DNA of 62,696 nucleotides, filler included, from Sluysia triapertura (Eukaryota): NCBI GenBank assembly GCA_046118255.1. It is 5 parts of 5 records of this genome, joined end to end, with 100 filler letters (N's around TTAATTAATTAA, not from the genome) between each part and the next. Parts side by side here need not be neighbours in the genome. Positions count along the whole stretch, not along the records: positions 1 to 13,630 come from JBJNIA010028389.1; 4 more parts are not named here. One strand, written 5' to 3'. The notes beneath the pieces are model-generated. The model searched no databases, had not been told where the DNA came from, and worked only from the letters and a program-made list of their open reading frames with translations. Every line of letters starts with the position of its first letter. Position 1 is the stretch's first letter. The translations under genes and the position numbers were made by a program. This document shows, one piece after another, positions 591 to 59,681 of the stretch.

Positions 591-1331
591 TTATGCATTA
601 GCAAATAATATAGTTCTAAAATCTGTCATTAACGATAATATAAACAAAAGATAACAAGAATTGAATTTATACTTTAAAAACCACATTAAGGCAAACATAA
701 CGGTTCCACTTTTTTGCGTTTCTTCATTACTAAAGAAATGTTCAATGGAAGATCTAGGTAAATAATATAAATCAATTAATTCGCCTTCATCCACATTCCC
801 TCCACCACTTGCTACTTTATTTTTCGTAGTAACTGTTACATAAAACATTGTCATTGAAGTACCAGTTAATGCAACACTGGATCTTAATTTAGCTATAAAT
901 TCTAAATTACCATGATCCACTTCATAACCACATTCTTCCAGTACTTCTTCAGCAGCAATTTCAGCCAATGATTTATTTTTATCAACTATTCCTGCACAAA
1001 TTTCCAAGGTGATTCCATACTTACCTGGTATTAAATCTGAAGAACCAGATTCTTTCAAATTTGAATTATATACAACTAGACAAAAATTACCTAATCAAAA
1101 TATTAAAACCTGGTCGAAATTGCTTCACAAGAACTATACTGTCAAGAGACTTATCGTAAATTAGTATACCCACGCTATCGTGACTTTCAATAGCATCCCA
1201 TATTTTATCGCGTCCATCCTAAGCAATAAACTAAAAATAATTAAGTAAACTTGAGTATATAATATTCTATATGGTTTGACAAACTTTGATGATGTAAGTG
1301 GAACTATTTTAAAAGAAGTTATATTATCCAT
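591..1331 (-). CDS. NUDT14: Nudix hydrolase, UDP-glucose/ADP-sugar pyrophosphatase (NUDT14-like); 3 exons: 1331-1251, 1218-1110, 1075-591
   Basis: The spliced translation MDNITSFKIVPLTSSKFVKPYRILYTQ|DGRDKIWDAIESHDSVGILIYDKSLDSIVLVKQFRP|VVY...GITLEICAGIVDK...AAEEVLEECGY...GGGNVDEGELI has the Nudix box and the NUDT14-typical HDSV, KQFRP and ELCAG-like motifs. GT-AG introns of 32 nt (1219-1250) and 34 nt (1076-1109) keep the frame. Confidence 0.9.
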
Positions 1332-1743: not shown

Positions 1744-2488
1744 ATGATATCCAAAGTGGCGAAGACAATTTATTTGTTAAATTCAAATGAAATAACTCCA
1801 ATTGAAGCTATACAAGTGAGTATTGAAGATGAATCACTATTTAGTTTTATTGAATTATTGGAAAATCCTAAGATAAAGATGCTCTCTCAAGATGAAAGTA
1901 CTAAACCATATTTTGATCTGTTAGAATTGTTTTGTTATGGTAATTATTCTGATTATAAAAAGTTGCAAAATCAATTACCAAAATTAACTCCAAAGCAATT
2001 GCGTAAATTGCATCAGTTAACAATTTTGTCTTTATCTATGACAAATGATGTTATTCTTTATGATGAAATGTATTATGCTCTAAATATGCATGATCAAACA
2101 GAATTAGAATCAATGATTCTTGATATGATTTATATGAATATGATTGATGGGTATTATGATCAAGAGCAACAAAATTTTCACGTAAAATCCAGCACTGGTC
2201 GGGATATTCCTACTAGTAAAGTAAGATAGAAATTATGCATGTTCATTTTATGTTTAAAAAGGCAACTTATTAATTTCGACATTTTTAGCAAGAACTTAAC
2301 ATATTTAGATTAAAGAAATTCGTCAAAAACTGATAAATTGGGGCTCTAAATGTAATGCTGTAATAGAAAAATTAAATCACGAATTTACGGTAGCGAATAA
2401 TAATAAAGCTCGATATAGAATGGAACAACAACAAAGTGCAATAAATCTTTCAAAGGCCCGTGAAGAAATTATACAAATGTTAAAAAAA
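1744..2488 (+). CDS. COPS7: COP9 signalosome subunit 7 (PCI domain); exons 1744-2220 and 2309-2488, 3' end uncertain
   Basis: Exon 1 has LLELFCYGNYSDY...LPKLTPKQLRKLHQLTILSL...ELESMILDMIY...GRDI. An 88-nt GTAAGA..TAG intron leads into IKEIRQKLINWGSKCNAVIEKLNHEFTVANNNK, the typical CSN7 C-terminal helices. A GTAAGT donor lies at 2489; otherwise the frame reads through to a stop near 2527. Confidence 0.88.
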
Positions 2489-6896: not shown

Positions 6897-8731
6897 CGGA
6901 TAATTAGTCCTTAATTTTAAAGAATTTATTGCAAAAATCTTAGAAATATCATAAAAATGAAGCGCTAAAAATATAAAATGACAAAGACTGCAACATACAT
7001 TTAAATAACAATATTTTGTTATTTATTATTATTATTATTGTTATTAAACAATAATAATAATTATTAAATATAAAATAATTATAATTATTAATAGCTCTAA
7101 TTATAGATTATAAAATAATAAAATATAAAATATATAAAATTGACTGTAAAATCAATAAGTAAATCAATTACAATTAAATGAGTCTCTTCTCCGCACCCGA
7201 AAAATTCATCATCGGCCAATTCGGAGTCGTTTTCGTTGTCAAGATTGATTAACTTTCCTCTTACTTGGTAATCTTCTGTTTCCCTTGTTATGTTATTTTT
7301 TTTCATGAAAAAGGAATAGGGGTATCAAAATGGAATACTTGCATTTGTTACTTAAAATATGAAAATGCAGAGAAGATGGAAATAAAAAAGAAGGTAATTT
7401 AGACGATGAACTAGTACCTGAATTATTTATTATTTCATTAACTTCTGACAGAGGATGGATCTTCTTAAGTAAAAAGGTCAAACAGTCAAGAAAGATTCTT
7501 AGCCTGTTGTTCCCAGGAGTCGTGTGGTGGAAAAAGATAAAGAAGTTTCATCACCTTTCGCGCTCAGAGGATTGGGTTAAAAGAATTGTGGGATAACAAC
7601 TCCTCGCAACCAACCATATGGTATTTGAAATGCATTTATAATTAAATCTGGAAAGAAATCAGAGGTAAGCCAATATTGAAATTACTATAAATAGAAGTTT
7701 TTGATAGTGCCTTAGTATTAGATAGGTTGAGACATTGTTCAAATTATTATTTAACAAGTATTAAATATTATTTGGAATTTTATTGTTTAAATCGTTATTA
7801 AGTGCTGGAATGATATTTTTGTTTGAACATTTGATTGCTAAATCTAGTAAATATAAATTTAAATTAAATTAAAATAAATAATATATAAAATAAATAAAAA
7901 ACGTTTATTCCTTTTTACAGTTTTACTAATTGTGGTAAACTTATAGAATTTTGTGTTGTTAATAATGCGTCATAGACTTTAAGTCTTAAACATTTCACCA
8001 GGGAATAATTAGGAAAAATTATGTATGAAACATTTTAATTGAACTTCCATCTTTAACAGCAAAGACGAGTATTAACTCAACCTTCAGGATAAATTTATAT
8101 TTAGTCATTAAAGAAATTTAAGAGAAAAGGGTTACTAAATAAAATCTACGTTCTTAAAATATTCTTTACAATAATAATAATTCTAATTATTATAATGTGA
8201 AATAAATTTATAATTTAAAATAAGTCTTAATAAAATAAAACTAATTTCATTACTTCAAAGGAAACATATTAAAAGTTCTAAAATTAAGAAAGAAATATTT
8301 CAAAAATACACTTAATTTAGCAGCTAAACAAAAATAGATCGTAGGAAACCTTGAGTGGGACTTACCACACTCCAAAAATAAAATTTCCATGTAACAAAAT
8401 GCATAATAAAGCACATAAATTAAAACCGCATGACCTTAATATCTTTTATATAGTGTCATTGGAAAATACGAATAAAATATGGCCAATTGAAACTTGCTGT
8501 GGATTTAAATGATTTATTAATAAGTATGGAAATAGGTTCTTACAACCTTTTATTATCTTAAATTTTAAAATTAATGTTCAACGATCTTAAGTAGAAAGTT
8601 GAGTTTAGAGTTTATGATTGAAGAATGTAAATTTATAGACACTAAAGTTTTTATTCAAAACATAAAATTTAAAAATTTGGGTATTTAATAATTTCTTCGT
8701 GTCTTCGGTGCTCTTGATCATCCACATTTCG

Positions 8732-10660
8732 CTATCTAAAAAGAAAGTAGAAATCAAATTGTTTTGGTGTGATAATAAAAGAAATTACTTTCTTATAACC
8801 AATATAATTAACGTTATATATTTTCAAAGTTGTTATTTCAATACAATTCAACAAATTCGTCAGTCTGAACAAGTGATCCGTGCAAGAAAAACATTCGGCT
8901 CCATGATTCACCAACTGACGACCGCATGCGCATATACACAATTGGTTCCGAATTTCGTACGCCTACCATTTAGATCACTACTATATGGACAAAGTGCCAT
9001 TCTAATGCGTTGACTTGTAATTAATCCTTTATTGGAATATTTATGAAACATAGAATTGCTAGGAAACGACGGAATATATATTGTACTCTTGGATATATGG
9101 CTAAGACAATGACAATTAAAAGGAATAGTATTATGACATACAGAGAGTATTTTAGAATCTTCTCTATATTCCCTATATAATTTGGATATATTTATTAGTA
9201 GGAGTTTGTCTGAAATCATTGATCTTATAAACATTTTGATGGTATTTGTGTTTAGAAGATTATCCTCTTTAAATCGTATATCGGCCATAAGTATTCTTTT
9301 ACCATTGACGGAATAACTGTTAACTAGACAAACAATCATTGGTGCGAAGGCTACACCTGCTTCCATTCGGAAACTCAAAATTCCTTGGATCATCTCAAAT
9401 TCCTCTTTATAATTTTCAAATAGTTCTGCACTAATCGACATCGTAATTTCATAAAAGGCGTACTCTTTTACATTTTCATTTAATCTTGTCACCTTTATAT
9501 TCGAACACCATTGAAAAATATAATGATAGAGTTGTCCATGCTTAATCTCATTCTATTTCCGAAACTGATGATGAGAATTTTCGAATTACTAACTTTACTT
9601 TTGAATATATTTTCATAGGAATGTGTAGGAATAATGGTTTGTTCTATATTTTGATTAGCAATTTTTTTGAAAAATTAAGATCGAGCATAGAATGGAGGAC
9701 ATGCAAATAAATATTACAAATGAAAATTTCATTAAATTTTTCCGGAATACAAATGCATGAGTTTTTTCGTCGTTCATGACTATAATGTTCTTGATCATTG
9801 TTAGATGTATTTAATAAAATGCTTTTATTTATTCAGTTGTAGAAGTCATTCATATTCATAGGTCCGATTGTTCGAGAAGTATGATCTAGAGTTGATACTC
9901 GTTTTATGAATCGTTTGTCTATTATTAAATCTAAATAATCTATTGTCTTTAACGATGTGATAAAAATTGCATCGAAAATTGTACTTTTTCGTTTAATAAA
10001 TACAATATTAGCAATCATCTAATTTATTTATTAATTATAAAATATAAAAGTTATTTCATATAATTGTTTGCTGTAACTCTAATTTCTAATTTTTTAATTT
10101 TTTAAACATCAAATTGTTATCGTACGTTTCTCCAAAATAAGTGTATGAAACTTATGAAAAATAAATGTCAAATGAAATCTTTTTTAACTGTTCTGCGTAG
10201 TCGATTATTGTCTTTGTGATGATTTTCTATTGGCTGCTCAACCAAAGTAATAAAAATGAAGAGAGTCACTCTGGCTGGACAACCAGTAATAACATTATTT
10301 CTACGTTGAAAAGCCAACCACTATCAATGGTGACAAGAATTCACACGTGGCAATCAACAGTGTCACCATTGATAGTGATAAGCACTGATTAAATAACGAA
10401 ATTAAATTAAAAATGATAAAAGCAAAATGATAATAATAATAACAATGTTATTATTGCTATTATTATAATACATAAATTTTTTGAAATCTTACATGCACTT
10501 TCTTTATTTCTTTTATTTCTGGACATATTAAAAGTTGAAAATAATGAAAATTAAAAATGATAATAATAACAATGTTATCGTTATTATTATTGTTATAAAT
10601 ACATAGTCTTTATATTACTTAACACGAACTTTCCTTATACTCTTTAATATTTCTTGACAT
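8732..10660 (-). pseudogene. CCCH zinc-finger cassette, copy A (duplicated leader, hairpin, interrupted ORF)
   Basis: Leaders ATGTCCAGAAAT (10526) and ATGTCAAGAAAT (10660). Perfect 17-bp stem 10319-10335/10361-10377. ORF pieces 10018-9833, 9492-8908 and 8941-8732 include LCPYSSDLNGRRTKFGTNCVYAH. Aligns by eye to copy C (INISKL/INIYKL, HLFRL/HLNRI). Contains stops and frameshifts. Confidence 0.6.
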
Positions 10661-11195
10661 ATTTTGAGTCAGAAATTGTGTCCAAATTATAAAAATTTTC
10701 GTATTTTTAGTGTTTTTTAAAACCTCCATTTTTATTTACAAAAATTTATTTCGATTAAATAAATTATACATTTTTTCTAATTTAAATATTGATTTAAAAA
10801 TTGATTTAAATATTTCTTAACTAATATTTATCTTAACTCATATTTAAATTTAATTTATTATAATTTATAAAAATATTTTTATAATATTTATAAAAATAAA
10901 AAGATAATTATTAATGGTATTTACAAATAATACAAATAAAATAAAAATAATAATTAATGTTATTACATTTTATTACGATCACAATTGTTTTTATTATATT
11001 ATTACTCCACATATTATTAATTCCTCACAATAATAACGCATAATAATAACAATGAACATTAGTAATAATAATATTTTTAGTAATATGGTGTGATATCGTA
11101 TGATAATACATTATTGGCTGCTTAAAAATAGTACAAAGTGAATTGATAAATTAGTATCACAATATAAATAACATTTAAAGAGCTCAATATATAAA

Positions 11196-11230
<35 letters not shown>

Positions 11231-11821
11231 ACGCAAAAATTATATTTGTAACGAACAGTATGCATGTTCAAAAAGTACATCTAAAATAACAATCAAACAA
11301 CTTAGAAAATATAAACTAAACAAAGTACAATAGATACTTGACGTCATAAAATGCACAATTCTTTATGGGGAAATTTTCGGCCCTGTGCGGGTGCACCTGT
11401 TGTACCTCCATAGTTACGACTCAGGTGGTTGACAAATATAAGTAATAGAAATGTAATCGAAGAAATAAAGACATTAATACATATTCAACCGTCGGAAGAA
11501 TTTTGTGTTAATTCTGCTCAATTATACATAACATAATTTATAATGAAAATAGTAATTGGTTATTTTTTGATAAAGTACAATTAAAAGATGAAAATCAAAG
11601 AATTATTTAACTTTTGAAACCTGATGGCATCTTAGTTCAAGCGATACTAAATTCTATTACAAATAAAAGCAGCTCAGTTCAATGCAGCTATCAGCGGTTA
11701 CCAAAACTAATGATATATGGTCATATAATATAGGCCAAATTTAAGGATATTTAAAAAAATCTTGTGTTGGTATATTATAGATAACATTTGGAGTAGTGAA
11801 GTACTGTGAAATTTTAAATGA

Positions 11822-12481: not shown

Positions 12482-12515
12482 CTAATGTATCAATTAAACT
12501 TAATCGATCGCGTTA

Positions 12516-12633
12516 AACTAGCCAAATTATGGTCTAGTTGTATTAGCAATTAAGCTAGCCGAATATGGTCTAGCAAATACAGAATGAATTTTATATAAAT
12601 TAAACTTTAAACTAGCCTTAGTAAGGTCTAGTT
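12516..12633 (+). repeat. Three bulged hairpins (A/G)CTAG-CC-N-GG-T-CTAG(T/C)
   Basis: 12516-12539 AACTAG CCA aatta TGG t CTAGTT; 12554-12574 GCTAG CCG aata TGG t CTAGC; 12610-12633 AACTAG CCTT agt AAGG t CTAGTT. Confidence 0.75.
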
Positions 12634-51529: not shown

Positions 51530-51830
51530 TTATTAAATTAGTTTATTATAATAATTATAATAATCATTTTAATTTTATCACTCAACAACCAATTTTAATT
51601 TATTTTCTGCCATCGGTAGACGGATTGATTAAAGCTAAATCAACATTTCGCGTTTGTTGTCTAACGATGACAGATACTAATCGAAATCATTTTGTGGTAG
51701 TTTGGTTTTTGTTTTTAAGATATCATAATCAATTATAACTACAAGTTTTTTGTCAAAATTATTAATAAATTTTCGTGAACTTTAAAACACAAATTTAAAA
51801 TTACTTTTTTTTCATCTTCTACTAAAAAAT
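51414..51830 (+). pseudogene. CCCH cassette, copy B (5' part only)
   Basis: ATGTCAAGAAAA leader with KERSC, a (TAT)n tract, a hairpin 51606-51621/51659-51674 (14 of 16 paired), then Y*SKSFCGSL and LSKLLINF (compare LSELLNNY in copy C). Confidence 0.55.
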
Positions 51831-51896: not shown

Positions 51897-53473
51897 CTAT
51901 TTTTTTAAAGTAAATTCTAATTTGTTAATTATTTCCTGAATACACCTTGGCTTTTCTTTGATTAAACTTCTCAAAAGGTATAAACATAAAAGTTGACTTA
52001 TATCAAAAATAAAAGAAATAGCTTCTAAGATTACTGTAGAGTCCTCTTGAATCGCTGTGTCCAATGACATAGTAGCTTGACCGGTGTTGAAATCATTAAT
52101 GATACTAATAGTGGAATTTTCCATGTCAGCGAAGATCGACAAACTTGATTATACGTCATTGATCCTGTTCAGATGAGTGTCGAAATTAAATGTGGAACCA
52201 ATATCATATCTTATTTCATAAACGTGATGGCAATAATTACAAATTCTACTATATCTCGTGCATTCGCCAGCCGGAGTAGATTCATACAGGTAAATACTGT
52301 TCTTGTAGTATTGGTGTTCATTGGTGTTAGTTTGATTATTTATAGAAAAAGGATTGCTGTTTTCATTGAAGAATCTTGAATAGATATATCTCGATTTTAA
52401 TTTGAACATATACTTTACTACTGGTGTTGCTTTATTTGTCATGATACTCAAATCAATATCTACAATATTTGTACAAACTAATTTGTAAATATTAATAGCA
52501 ATTTCTAAAACTTAATCATGTATTTGCATACTTGATGTGTGAGCATCTTTATTTTTATTCACCATTTTACAGTACTGTAAACGAATATGATTAGAATTAA
52601 ACTGCTTATATTGAGTTGTAAAACATCGTTCATTTGAACTTGTAATCTTTTTATTCATCATCAACACTAAGTTGGGAAATTTTATAATTATTGAATATTT
52701 ATTCTGGTCTTTAAAGTATTTAGACATATCATATCGGTCTTCTAATCTAACATCGTTTTTTAAATAATCGTTCATTTGAATGTTGTATACAATATTTCCA
52801 TCATCATATTTGGATGAGATATGTGATAGAAGACTTCGTATATTAGATTCATTTAATGTGAGCATTAATTTTTACAATCGTCTAAAATTACTAAATAAAA
52901 CAAAACAATTTTTTGCCAAATTTATTAATTTTTCAAATGATTTGTAACAGTTATTGTTAGAAAATATTTGTCTCTTTTTTGCTGTTTTATTTTCTGTATT
53001 TTGGCTATAATTGTTCAATAACTCTGATAAAGTGTAATTATTTTTGTACACCATCTGTGAATTAACAACTATTGGAGAATAATAGTATTTAGCAATAGAG
53101 AACTGATTAGATGTCCAATTACACTGAAGTAAATGCAGATCGAACATCTGCACATGGTACCAGCCACTAGTTGACAATCATAGTGGAGAGTTATAAGTTT
53201 TTAATTTAAATCCGTCAACTAGTGGCAGATGCAGTAAAATAATAATAATAATAATAGTAATAGTAATAATAATAGAACAAAAATTATTTAATAAAAATAT
53301 TAATAATAATTGATAATAGAAATAATAATAAAAATGGTGATAATGAATACAATAATAGTAATACTAATAATAATAACAATAATAATAATGTAAAATAAAG
53401 ATAAAAAATTACATAAATCTTTCTTAATGTAATAAACACATTCTTTCTGCTTATATATCTTATTTCTAGACAT
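51897..53473 (-). pseudogene. CCCH cassette, copy C (best preserved)
   Basis: Leader MSRNKIYKQKECVYYIKKDLC (ATG 53473), (ATT)n tract, perfect 13-bp stem 53163-53175/53214-53226. Four ORF-track ORFs (53177 to 51897) lie in one frame separated by three TAA codons. Includes YYKNSIYLYESTPAGECTRYSRICNYCH. Confidence 0.65.
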
Positions 53474-58271: not shown

Positions 58272-59681
58272 ATTTCAAGAGTACAAGATATCAAATAAAC
58301 AGAATTATGTAAAGAAGAAATTTTTATGTTATTATTATTATTAATTCTTATTTTATTATTCATTATTATTTATTTTATTTTATATTTATTATTATTCTTA
58401 GTTTCATCATTACTAATATTATTACCTGCATTAATAATGTCATTATTAATTACTGTTATTAATTGATTTTTATTCTCAACATTTTGTCACAAAATTTGCG
58501 TTGTTCATTGTCATTATCTCCTGGTAACACCACCTTTAATTGAATTTTTAATTTTATGGTCACAGTAACTGTCATTGTGGACAGTATTTTGATAAGTTTA
58601 AATTAAATTTCATTACATTGATATAGCTACTAACAGTCATAATTTCCAATTGGACATCCAATCATTGCTAATCAATGGAAAAAAGCACTACTCGATTCAA
58701 TAAACAAAAAAACCAAAAACATTATTAAAAAAAACTTCTTGACAATCATTGTTGTTTTAATTTTATACTCAGTTAAAAAGACACAGTTTCTAGAATGAAA
58801 ATTTTATTAATGATTTTGTATATTTAATTAATTATCATGGATCATAACAATAACAGAAATGATAATGCAATTATTAGCTCTTTATCGAACAATCTAGTTC
58901 ATTTTAATCGTTGAAAATCAATTGAAAATAGTAAGAAAGTAGTATGTATCATAATATAAGATGTGGTTCTGTTGGACAGTTAAATCTTGATTTAGTACTA
59001 GAATATCAATTTTATAAGAGTGCAGCACTGTTTTATAGAAAAGGTTATATTGATTTAAAATTGTATGATGATTCTAACAATAATTATTTACCAAATAAAG
59101 ATTCTGATGAAATACGTTCTACAGAAAACATTTAAACTACAATTAATAGCGATTCAATTAACATCATCATGTAAATTGCAAAATCAGGAATGCTCAACAT
59201 TAAATGTATATCTTCGCATTATTAAACAAGATTTTAAAACAATCAAGTATTTCAAGATTCTAATTCTCCATGTTCCACAAAGAATATTTCAAGTAATCGG
59301 AACAAAGAATCTTTTGACGTGTTTAGTCCGAGTAATGATAAATTTGGCATTATGAATCACTCTCATGACAAATATAAGTTTCCAAAGTATGATCTCTGTC
59401 CATTTCCGGCTACTACATCGGGACTATGTGTAAAGTATGCCTATCTGTGTCCTTATGCCCATAGTTTCAACGAATTGACACCAATTTCTGAAAATTCAAT
59501 ACGGGCATCATATTTCAGTATCGAAAATTTTAATGAAGTAAATTTTTATTCTTTTGAAAATTGTTTTATTCTTGATTTTTATGTTCGTAATAATAATCTC
59601 ATAATTTTACTTTCAGGATATGACTCAATCGTTCTTTTTGTATGTTCGAGAAATAAAACAAAAAATTTTTATAACTTTTAG
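58272..59681 (+). pseudogene. CCCH cassette, copy D
   Basis: Leader SRVQDIK*TELCKEE, a (TAT)n tract and a weak stem. SNWTSNHC compares with CNWTSNQF in copy C, and KRHSF*NENFINDFVYLIN with KRQIFSNNNCYKSFEKLIN. The finger KYDLCPFPATTSGLCVKYAYLCPYAHSFNEL is intact. Frameshifted. Confidence 0.65.

What the first reader, a model, noticed from the sequence alone, without database searches (positions are those of the whole stretch)
10319..10377. Hairpin conserved in position and pairing, not in sequence, across the cassette copies
Seen (sense strand): A has CACTATCAATGGTGACA-25nt-TGTCACCATTGATAGTG (17/17). C has GCCACTAGTTGAC-38nt-GTCAACTAGTGGC (13/13, 53163-53226). B has TCTGCCATCGGTAGAC-37nt-GTCTAACGATGACAGA (14/16, 51606-51674). 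D has only ATAATGTCA...TGTCATTAT (8/9, 58434-58517). Stems differ in sequence but stay complementary. All have TTGTC at the start of the 3' arm, and in B and C two extra G-U pairs form only on the sense strand. Inference: selection acted on an RNA structure. It could be an autoregulatory site for the encoded CCCH protein next to a UAU-rich tract, a recoding signal, a splicing aid or a small-RNA precursor.
Basis: partly seen in the sequence, partly recalled or inferred. Interest (0 to 1): 0.75.

Follow-up and report, generated by a model that had tools for sequence, protein, structure and literature searches.

The report
Conserved hairpin inside a genomic repeat
The 17-bp hairpin is real and its pairing has been kept through compensating changes, but it is one of several palindromes in the non-coding leader of a very abundant, mostly dead, lineage-specific repeat, and nothing yet shows whether it works as RNA.

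Summary
The inverted repeat at 10319-10335/10361-10377 is exact (17/17, 25-nt loop; 19 bp on the minus strand). It is far beyond chance.

It is not a feature of a single-copy gene. It sits in a dispersed repeat, window 8494-10664, sense on the minus strand, with more than 1000 candidate copies in a 619-Mb, 25 % GC eukaryote genome. Full copies are about 2.5 kb with sharp ends and no target duplication seen. They hold a 1-kb leader and one orphan ORF with a C-x9-C-x6-C-x3-H finger. The window copy is 5'-truncated and its ORF is broken.

Across 60 copies the stem is 88.6 % paired. Nine of 19 pairs show double, pair-keeping changes in at least five lineages. Thirty genomic places keep identical arms around several unrelated loop types. 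A second palindrome that ends in a CCAAT box lies about 30 nt downstream in the window copy and behaves the same way.

So constraint on pairing is supported. The RNA reading is not shown:
- G·U and A·C mismatches are equally common.
- Rfam has no match at gathering score.
- No RNA data exist.

Best guess (about 0.4): stem-loops in a long leader RNA of the repeat.

The parts
8494..10664 (-). One 5'-truncated, decayed copy of a high-copy dispersed repeat. Full copies are about 2.5 kb; this one lacks roughly the first 450 nt of the leader.
   Evidence: Homology to other genomic copies stops sharply at about 8494 and 10664. Other copies extend 650-750 nt upstream of the hairpin; this one extends 288 nt.
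10319..10377 (.). Palindrome P1, the finding. Arms are 10319-10335 and 10361-10377 (17/17); the loop is 10336-10360.
   Evidence: The exact pattern is also found at 29 other genomic places.
10317..10379 (-). P1 read on the sense strand: a 19-bp stem including one U·G. Most copies have C·G at that position.
   Evidence: fold; alignment A1.
10229..10287 (-). Palindrome P2: about 21-bp arms (ACTGGTTGTCCAGCCAGAGTGA ... TTACTTTGGTTGAGCAGCCAAT) and an AU-rich loop with the conserved core TCATTATTTTTAT. It is partly decayed in this copy.
10229..10233 (-). CCAAT box at the 3' edge of P2. It is nearly invariant across subfamilies, even where its pairing partner is mismatched.
   Evidence: Alignment A3; pair 8-76 is mostly unpaired.
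10400..10664 (-). Two tandem units of about 130 nt (10400-10533 and 10527-10664). Each holds an AT-rich palindrome (AATAATAACAATGTTATTATT type, P0).
   Evidence: (D6, I1, I7). TRF did not report the pair.
10056..10219 (-). Stretch between P2 and the start codon that does not align between subfamilies.
   Evidence: Gap in BLAST homology in most copies.
9833..10018 (-). Start of the repeat's ORF: a conserved Met followed by ...DYLDLIIDKRFIKRVST... The frame is broken after 61 codons in this copy.
8908..9492 (-). Longest open piece of the ORF (194 aa) in this copy.
8932..8997 (-). Remnant of the C-x9-C-x6-C-x3-H finger (CPYSSDLNGRRTKFGTNCVYAH). The second Cys is replaced by Arg here.
   Evidence: 13 of 28 distinct copies keep C,C,C,H. 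Pfam PF25427 is below its cut-off.
8494..8520 (-). 3' terminus of the repeat (...TTTAAATCCACAGCA in this copy; ...ATCCACAACA in most).

Best explanation
Shown. The hairpin is palindrome P1 of a series (an AT-rich P0 in each 130-nt unit, then P1, then P2). The series lies in the roughly 1-kb non-coding region upstream of the single ORF of a very abundant, lineage-specific dispersed repeat. The window holds one dead, 5'-truncated copy. In the lineages that kept making copies, the two arms stayed complementary through paired substitutions, while the loop changed freely in sequence and somewhat in length.

Inferred. P1 and P2 are cis-acting elements of the repeat itself, not of the host. They most likely act as stem-loops in a long leader RNA transcribed from near the element's 5' end. 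That leader would be a G-poor, probably unstructured stretch of about 500 nt, followed by two stable hairpins just before the ORF. The hairpins could then control translation or stability, or mark the RNA for binding by the element's own CCCH protein. The conserved AU-rich loop of P2 is the most obvious candidate site for a CCCH finger.

I put about 0.8 on 'a functional cis element of the repeat kept by selection on pairing'. I put about 0.4 on 'it acts as RNA on the sense strand'; the confidence below is for that narrower claim.
For: Pairing across copies:
- 88.6 % of 1131 cells are paired, against 24-61 % when the partner is slid by 1-3 columns.
- Nine of 19 pairs show double changes.
- 32 double-changed cells against 9.3 +/- 2.7 in shuffles, and covariation score 0.169 against 0.130 (both 0 of 500).
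- Read from alignment A1, the double changes fall in at least five lineages: L025/39/50/80/94 (three pairs); L048/76 (about three pairs); L051/57/78/108 (one pair); L043 (one pair); L017 (one pair).

Stems against loops:
- Divergence is 10-13 % in the arms, against 27 % in the loop and 22-34 % in the flanks.
- Thirty places keep identical 17+17 arms around several unrelated loop types of 21-26 nt; the reversed control gives 0.
- Variable spacing argues against two phased half-sites on B-DNA.
- From general knowledge, a spacer of about 25 nt disfavours cruciform extrusion.

P2 behaves alike: 82.7 % paired, 30 double-changed cells against 15.7 (3 of 500).

Strand-specific constraint nearby: the leader is 4-7 % G against 17-22 % C on the sense strand in nine copies.

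The hairpin never occurs without its flanks. The ORF start is conserved about 300 nt downstream of P1.
Against: There is no direct evidence of transcription. The only public run holding the sequence is DNA contigs.

Mismatch types are symmetric between strands: P1 has 59 G·U against 47 A·C (p 0.29), and P2 has 118 against 139 (p 0.21). Subfamily-wide A·C mismatches, which an RNA helix should disfavour, are present.

The two relatedness-robust measures are only marginal for P1 (34/500 and 15/500) and null for P2. RNAalifold on the raw alignment did not recover the long stem.

A nearly invariant CCAAT box at the edge of P2, about 205 nt before the ATG, fits a promoter whose start site lies downstream of both palindromes. 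In that case neither palindrome would be in the mRNA.

The stem sequence itself is strongly conserved, so sequence-specific recognition is also in play.
Confidence: 0.4

Rival explanations
1. DNA-level promoter or enhancer module. P1 and P2 are inverted repeats of protein-binding sites upstream of the transcription start. P2 is bracketed by CCAAT/ATTGG boxes. The arms change together because both half-sites must fit the same protein, possibly the element-encoded one that co-evolves with each subfamily.
For: - CCAAT is nearly invariant while its pairing partner is usually mismatched (36 A·C cells at pair 8-76).
- About 205 nt separate CCAAT from the ATG.
- Each P2 arm is itself a small palindrome of the TGGTTG-NN-CAACCA type.
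- G·U and A·C counts are symmetric.
- Arm sequences are strongly conserved.
Against: - Arm-to-arm spacing varies from 21 to 26 bp, and to 38-39 bp in the C-type. That would rotate the half-sites relative to each other.
- Nine of 19 positions changed on both arms, so much of the sequence is not itself recognised.
- The G-poor sense strand of the leader needs another explanation.
Confidence: 0.25
2. Hairpins in a single-stranded DNA intermediate of the element's own replication or transposition, of the rolling-circle or HUH type, or a replication-origin-like module.
For: - No target-site duplication in three copies with both ends.
- Sharp ends.
- Several palindromes in a row.
- Symmetric mismatch types.
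Against: - The palindromes are internal, about 730 nt from the 5' end and about 1700 nt from the 3' end, not subterminal.
- The termini do not match Helitron ends (5' TC, 3' CTRR).
- The only ORF has no detectable Rep, HUH or any other enzyme domain.
Confidence: 0.1
3. No function. The palindromes are created and re-symmetrised by template switching between arms during replication, and they hitch-hike in a successful repeat. Their conservation reflects the youth of the copies rather than selection.
For: - The region keeps spawning different, non-homologous palindromes: the extra one in L075, the C-type, and P0.
- Relatedness-robust covariation measures are marginal.
- Mismatch types are symmetric.
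Against: - The arms are much less diverged than the loop and flanks in the same copies.
- Identical arms sit around several unrelated loop types.
- P1 and P2 persist across subfamilies whose proteins are only 36-50 % identical.
Confidence: 0.2

Closest known systems
Cis-acting stem-loops in untranslated regions of retroelements (for example the 3' stem-loops that stringent-type LINE reverse transcriptases recognise, or structured retroviral leaders). From general knowledge.
   Same: A structure kept by compensating changes among subfamilies of a repeat. The stem is conserved and the loop is free. It serves the element, not the host.
   Different: No reverse transcriptase, poly(A) tail or target duplication was found here. 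The structure is upstream of the ORF, not at the 3' end. Transcription is unproven.
ORF1-only non-autonomous non-LTR elements (HAL1 in mammals, HeT-A in Drosophila). From general knowledge.
   Same: One ORF with a predicted long helical segment and a zinc finger. No enzyme domain. High copy number.
   Different: The finger is CCCH, not the CCHC knuckle. 5' ends are mostly full-length and sharp rather than truncated. No A-rich tail. There is no sequence or confident structural similarity to any ORF1p.
Baculovirus hr-type repeated palindromes (enhancer and origin elements). From general knowledge.
   Same: Tandem units carrying imperfect palindromes upstream of genes. Arm symmetry is maintained.
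   Different: The hr palindromes have no long spacer and lie in viral genomes. Here the unit is a 2.5-kb dispersed repeat with no viral gene.
Helitron 3' subterminal hairpin
   Same: A mobile element without target duplication that carries a conserved hairpin.
   Different: The ends are not 5' TC and 3' CTRR. The hairpin is internal, about 1.7 kb from the 3' end. There is no Rep/helicase.
TTP-type CCCH protein binding AU-rich elements in its own mRNA. From general knowledge.
   Same: A CCCH finger is encoded next to a conserved UAUUUUUAU-like tract (the P2 loop).
   Different: A single finger with unusual spacing, below the Pfam cut-off. Binding is untested. The tract is upstream of the ORF, not in a 3' UTR.

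Membership tests
Any Rfam RNA family | Score at or above the family's gathering threshold | tested here: not met
   No match with E<=1 in window 8000-11500. In five better-preserved copies, only P2 matched mir-2319 (26.3 and 25.7 bits on the plus and minus strands, against 89 needed) and mir-219 (22.6 bits against 54.5 needed).
microRNA precursor | Roughly 30 bp or more of near-continuous stem with a short terminal loop, and small RNA reads from one arm | tested here: not met
   The stem is 17-19 bp and the loop 25 nt. Small-RNA reads could not be tested because no RNA run exists.
MITE inserted independently into each copy | The hairpin occurs elsewhere without the surrounding repeat, with its own target duplication | tested here: not met
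   All 40 scored genomic hits to 10200-10500 span the flanks as well as the hairpin. The hairpin aligns in register in 60 copies.
Helitron | 5' TC and 3' CTRR termini, a hairpin 10-20 nt from the 3' end, Rep/helicase in autonomous copies | tested here: not met
   The termini are (T)GTGGTGGCC... and ...ATCCACAACA. The hairpin is internal. No Pfam domain other than a weak CCCH match.
LTR or solo LTR | TG...CA ends with a short inverted repeat, plus a 4-6 bp target duplication | tested here: inconclusive
   The ends read TGTGGTGG...CCACAACA, which fits TG...CA. No consistent duplication was seen in three copies with both ends: about 1-2 of 5, 0-1 of 5 and 4 of 5 bases match. No PBS- or PPT-like flanks were seen.
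Non-LTR retrotransposon or retroposon | Reverse transcriptase or a shared 3' tail with an RT-bearing partner, a poly(A) or simple-repeat tail, frequent 5' truncation, variable target duplication | tested here: not met
   No RT domain. No A-tail after the 3' end. In 15 of 18 copies homology reaches 530-880 nt upstream of the hairpin, against 182-289 nt in three truncated copies, and nearly all hits start at position 1.
CCCH zinc finger (Pfam PF25427, UNK-like) | Score at or above the 31.1-bit gathering cut-off, with three Cys and one His in register | tested here: inconclusive
   Scores are 27.9 bits for the best copy and 16.3 bits for the window copy, both below the cut-off. C-x9-C-x6-C-x3-H is kept in 13 of 28 distinct copies. 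The window copy has Arg at the second Cys.
Structured RNA under selection (covariation criterion) | Significant pair-keeping double substitutions beyond what phylogeny gives, with G·U tolerated more than A·C | tested here: inconclusive
   Double changes exceed shuffled and slid controls. The relatedness-robust measures are marginal, and G·U is about as common as A·C. R-scape is not available.

The most novel reading that the evidence does not exclude
The repeat is a previously undescribed kind of mobile element. Its only gene is an orphan coiled-coil/CCCH protein that recognises the element's own hairpins (P1/P2, as RNA or single-stranded DNA). Protein and hairpins would co-evolve subfamily by subfamily. 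That would make a self-recognising nucleic-acid/protein module spread by borrowed machinery, with no known transposase or reverse transcriptase of its own.
Probability: 0.12. Interest if true: 0.7.

Novelty: new member of a known kind. Interest (0 to 1): 0.38.

Why it matters
If the palindromes act as the repeat's own recognition or control signals, they would give a handle on how an unclassified, very successful element spreads and is expressed. This element has well over a thousand candidate copies (560-1693 in first-look scans) and no protein relative among 1.8 billion representative sequences.

For genome annotation the practical points are:
- The 'CCCH gene cassettes' in this genome are repeat copies, mostly pseudogenes.
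- Hairpins in them should not be read as host regulatory RNAs.
- 'Different stems at the same place' partly reflects several non-homologous palindromes in one palindrome-rich leader.

Tried and rejected
- Rfam, with permissive thresholds, on the window and on five better-preserved copies: nothing at gathering score.
- RNAalifold on the unfiltered 60-copy alignment: it returned only a 6-bp local helix, probably because many decayed copies break pairs. I relied on explicit pair counts instead.
- Strand test by G·U against A·C: no asymmetry for P1 or P2. Power is low because most mismatches arose after insertion.
- Expression: the single public run that holds the sequence is genomic contigs and gives no RNA information.
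- Protein identity:
  - Pfam gives only a sub-threshold CCCH match.
  - The word-indexed search gave 0 hits.
  - The exhaustive profile search gave 0 hits.
  - The ESM Atlas gave no usable hit.
  - The AlphaFold model has pLDDT 46.6, too poor for a fold search.
- Element class: no target duplication, only an 8-nt imperfect terminal inverted repeat, and no Helitron, LTR or LINE hallmarks.
- Organism: not identified. Neighbouring NUDIX and CSN7 exons show an intron-bearing eukaryote.
- One literature search found nothing relevant.
- TRF did not report the two-copy 130-nt unit.

Full report
**Observation.** The plus strand reads CACTATCAATGGTGACA at 10319-10335, a 25-nt spacer, then TGTCACCATTGATAGTG at 10361-10377. 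As RNA the minus strand folds into a 19-bp stem that includes one U·G (-35.5 kcal/mol, z -5.1). The plus strand forms a 17-bp stem (-28.4 kcal/mol, z -4.1). None of 200 shuffles folds as well. The coordinates and the 17/17 count are correct, and the repeat is far beyond chance.

**Context.** The window is 25 % GC. The 300 bases around the hairpin have 1128 first-look candidates in the window's own genome (619 Mb in 263,945 contigs). All 40 scored hits are 76-86 % identical and span the flanks as well as the hairpin. Homology to other copies ends sharply at about 8494 and 10664.

The sense strand is the minus strand. Translated copies share a long ORF, and a protein search gave 152 matches at 36-76 % identity, most with internal stops.

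In other copies the element continues 650-750 nt further upstream. It reaches a precise 5' end, (T)GTGGTGGCCAACC. Nearly all of 40 hits to that end begin at its first base, out of 1693 candidates. The 3' end is ...ATCCACAACA. Three copies with both ends show no consistent target duplication.

The window copy is therefore 5'-truncated. It is also coding-dead. Its frames are broken, and its zinc-finger motif reads C-R-C-H, where 13 of 28 distinct copies keep C-x9-C-x6-C-x3-H.

**The protein.** The ORF product has no relatives.
- Pfam gives only a sub-threshold UNK-like CCCH match.
- The word-indexed search and the exhaustive profile search both returned nothing.
- The AlphaFold model is poor (pLDDT 46.6), showing little beyond a long helical segment.

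**Layout of a full copy, sense strand.**
- About 500 nt of leader with 4-7 % G and 17-22 % C.
- One or more units of about 130 nt, each with an AT-rich palindrome P0.
- P1, the finding.
- About 30-40 nt further on, P2: arms of about 21 nt around a conserved AU-rich loop, ending in a nearly invariant CCAAT.
- About 160 nt that do not align between subfamilies.
- The conserved start codon (window 10018).
- An ORF that runs almost to the 3' end.

**Covariation in P1.** I aligned 60 non-identical copies with MAFFT, without using the structure.
- For the 19-pair stem, 88.6 % of 1131 cells are standard pairs, against 24-61 % when the 3' partner is slid by 1-3 columns.
- Nine pairs have changes on both sides.
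- Thirty-two cells carry such changes, against 9.3 +/- 2.7 in shuffles (0 of 500).
- The covariation score is 0.169 against 0.130 (0 of 500).
- The two measures least inflated by relatedness are marginal: 34/500 and 15/500.

Reading the alignment, the double changes fall in at least five lineages:

| Lineage | Pairs changed |
|---|---|
| L025/39/50/80/94 | three pairs (CACTATC...GATAGTG became CATCATC...GATGATG, and T·A became C·G further in) |
| L048/76 | about three pairs |
| L051/57/78/108 | one pair |
| L043 | one pair |
| L017 | one pair |

For the first lineage alone, three changes in one arm are matched at the same three positions, by the complementary bases, in the other arm. My estimate is that this is a 1e-4 to 1e-5 event without constraint.

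**Stems against loops.**
- The arms are the least diverged part of the region: 10-13 % against 27 % for the loop and 22-34 % for the flanks.
- A genome-wide pattern search found 30 places with exactly the window's 17+17 arms. Their loops are of several unrelated types and 21-26 nt long. The reversed control found none.
- P2 gives a similar but weaker picture: 82.7 % paired, 30 double-changed cells against 15.7 +/- 4.8 (3 of 500), and no excess in the robust measures.

**What is not supported.**
In P1, G·U cells number 59 and A·C cells 47 (p 0.29). In P2 the counts are 118 and 139 (p 0.21). Both kinds also occur as subfamily-wide states. One apparent compensation path goes through an A·C intermediate (L003, then L017).
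- *Structure prediction.* RNAalifold on the raw alignment did not recover the long stem.
- *Known RNA families.* Rfam has no family for either palindrome.
- *Expression.* No RNA run holds the sequence. The one run that does is genomic contigs.
- *Other readings.* A recoding signal is unlikely, because the hairpin lies about 300 nt upstream of the start codon. The stem is too short and the loop too long for a typical microRNA precursor.
The C-type pattern occurs at 8 genomic places, and its loop contains a motif that lies upstream of P1 in the main family. L075 carries an extra palindrome resembling B between its own P1 and P2. So part of 'same place, different sequence' comes from comparing different palindromes in a palindrome-rich leader. 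The true homologues of P1 are rather conserved in sequence.

**Mechanism.** It is shown that pairing between the arms was maintained in the propagating copies of a repeat family. The rest is inferred.
- Variable loop length argues against two phased half-sites on double-stranded DNA.
- From general knowledge, a spacer of about 25 nt makes cruciform extrusion unlikely. The stem would therefore form in a single strand.
- The strongly G-poor sense strand of the leader points to a strand-specific constraint, most simply a transcript.

On this basis I favour stem-loops in a long leader RNA of the element (about 0.4). They could control translation or serve as binding sites for the element's own CCCH protein. 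The main rivals are:
- a DNA-level promoter module, favoured by the invariant CCAAT at about 205 nt from the ATG and by symmetric mismatches (about 0.25);
- neutral palindromes renewed by template switching (about 0.2);
- hairpins of a single-stranded DNA intermediate (about 0.1).

**Comparison and novelty.** Conserved cis-acting hairpins in mobile elements are a known kind of thing. This one belongs to an element I could not place in any class, with an orphan protein. That is a modest novelty. It is not a new host RNA.

Noticed in passing
window 591-1058 (-) and 1744-2229 (+): Two host-gene exons: a NUDIX hydrolase-like exon (sub-threshold Pfam match) and a COP9 signalosome subunit 7 / PCI-domain exon that ends at a GTAAGA-type splice donor. 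They show the contig comes from an intron-bearing eukaryote. The organism was not identified.
   Followed up: partly
window 10670-11036: A different dispersed repeat abuts the truncated 5' end of the element. Hits on three other contigs are 74-75 % identical. The stretch is extremely AT-rich (14 % GC).
   Followed up: no
locus L075 878-946: An extra 15-bp perfect palindrome (GCCATCAGTCGACAG, 37 nt, CTGTCGACTGATGAC) sits between P1 and P2 in one subfamily.
   Followed up: partly
leader of full-length copies, e.g. L016 211-700: The sense strand of the roughly 500-nt leader is strongly G-depleted (4-7 % G against 17-22 % C). The window copy lacks this part.
   Followed up: partly
window 12513-12539 and 12607-12633: Two 27-nt direct repeats 94 nt apart. 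Each is internally palindromic (TTAAACTAGCC...GGTCTAGTT). They are unrelated to the element.
   Followed up: no
window 11195-11215 (-): A short (TG)n microsatellite follows a (TA)n run in the flank.
   Followed up: no
locus L059 1045-2409 (-): The longest open frame found (454 aa) owes its length to a deletion that fuses the region just after P1 to the middle of the ORF. No sampled copy has the whole ORF intact.
   Followed up: partly
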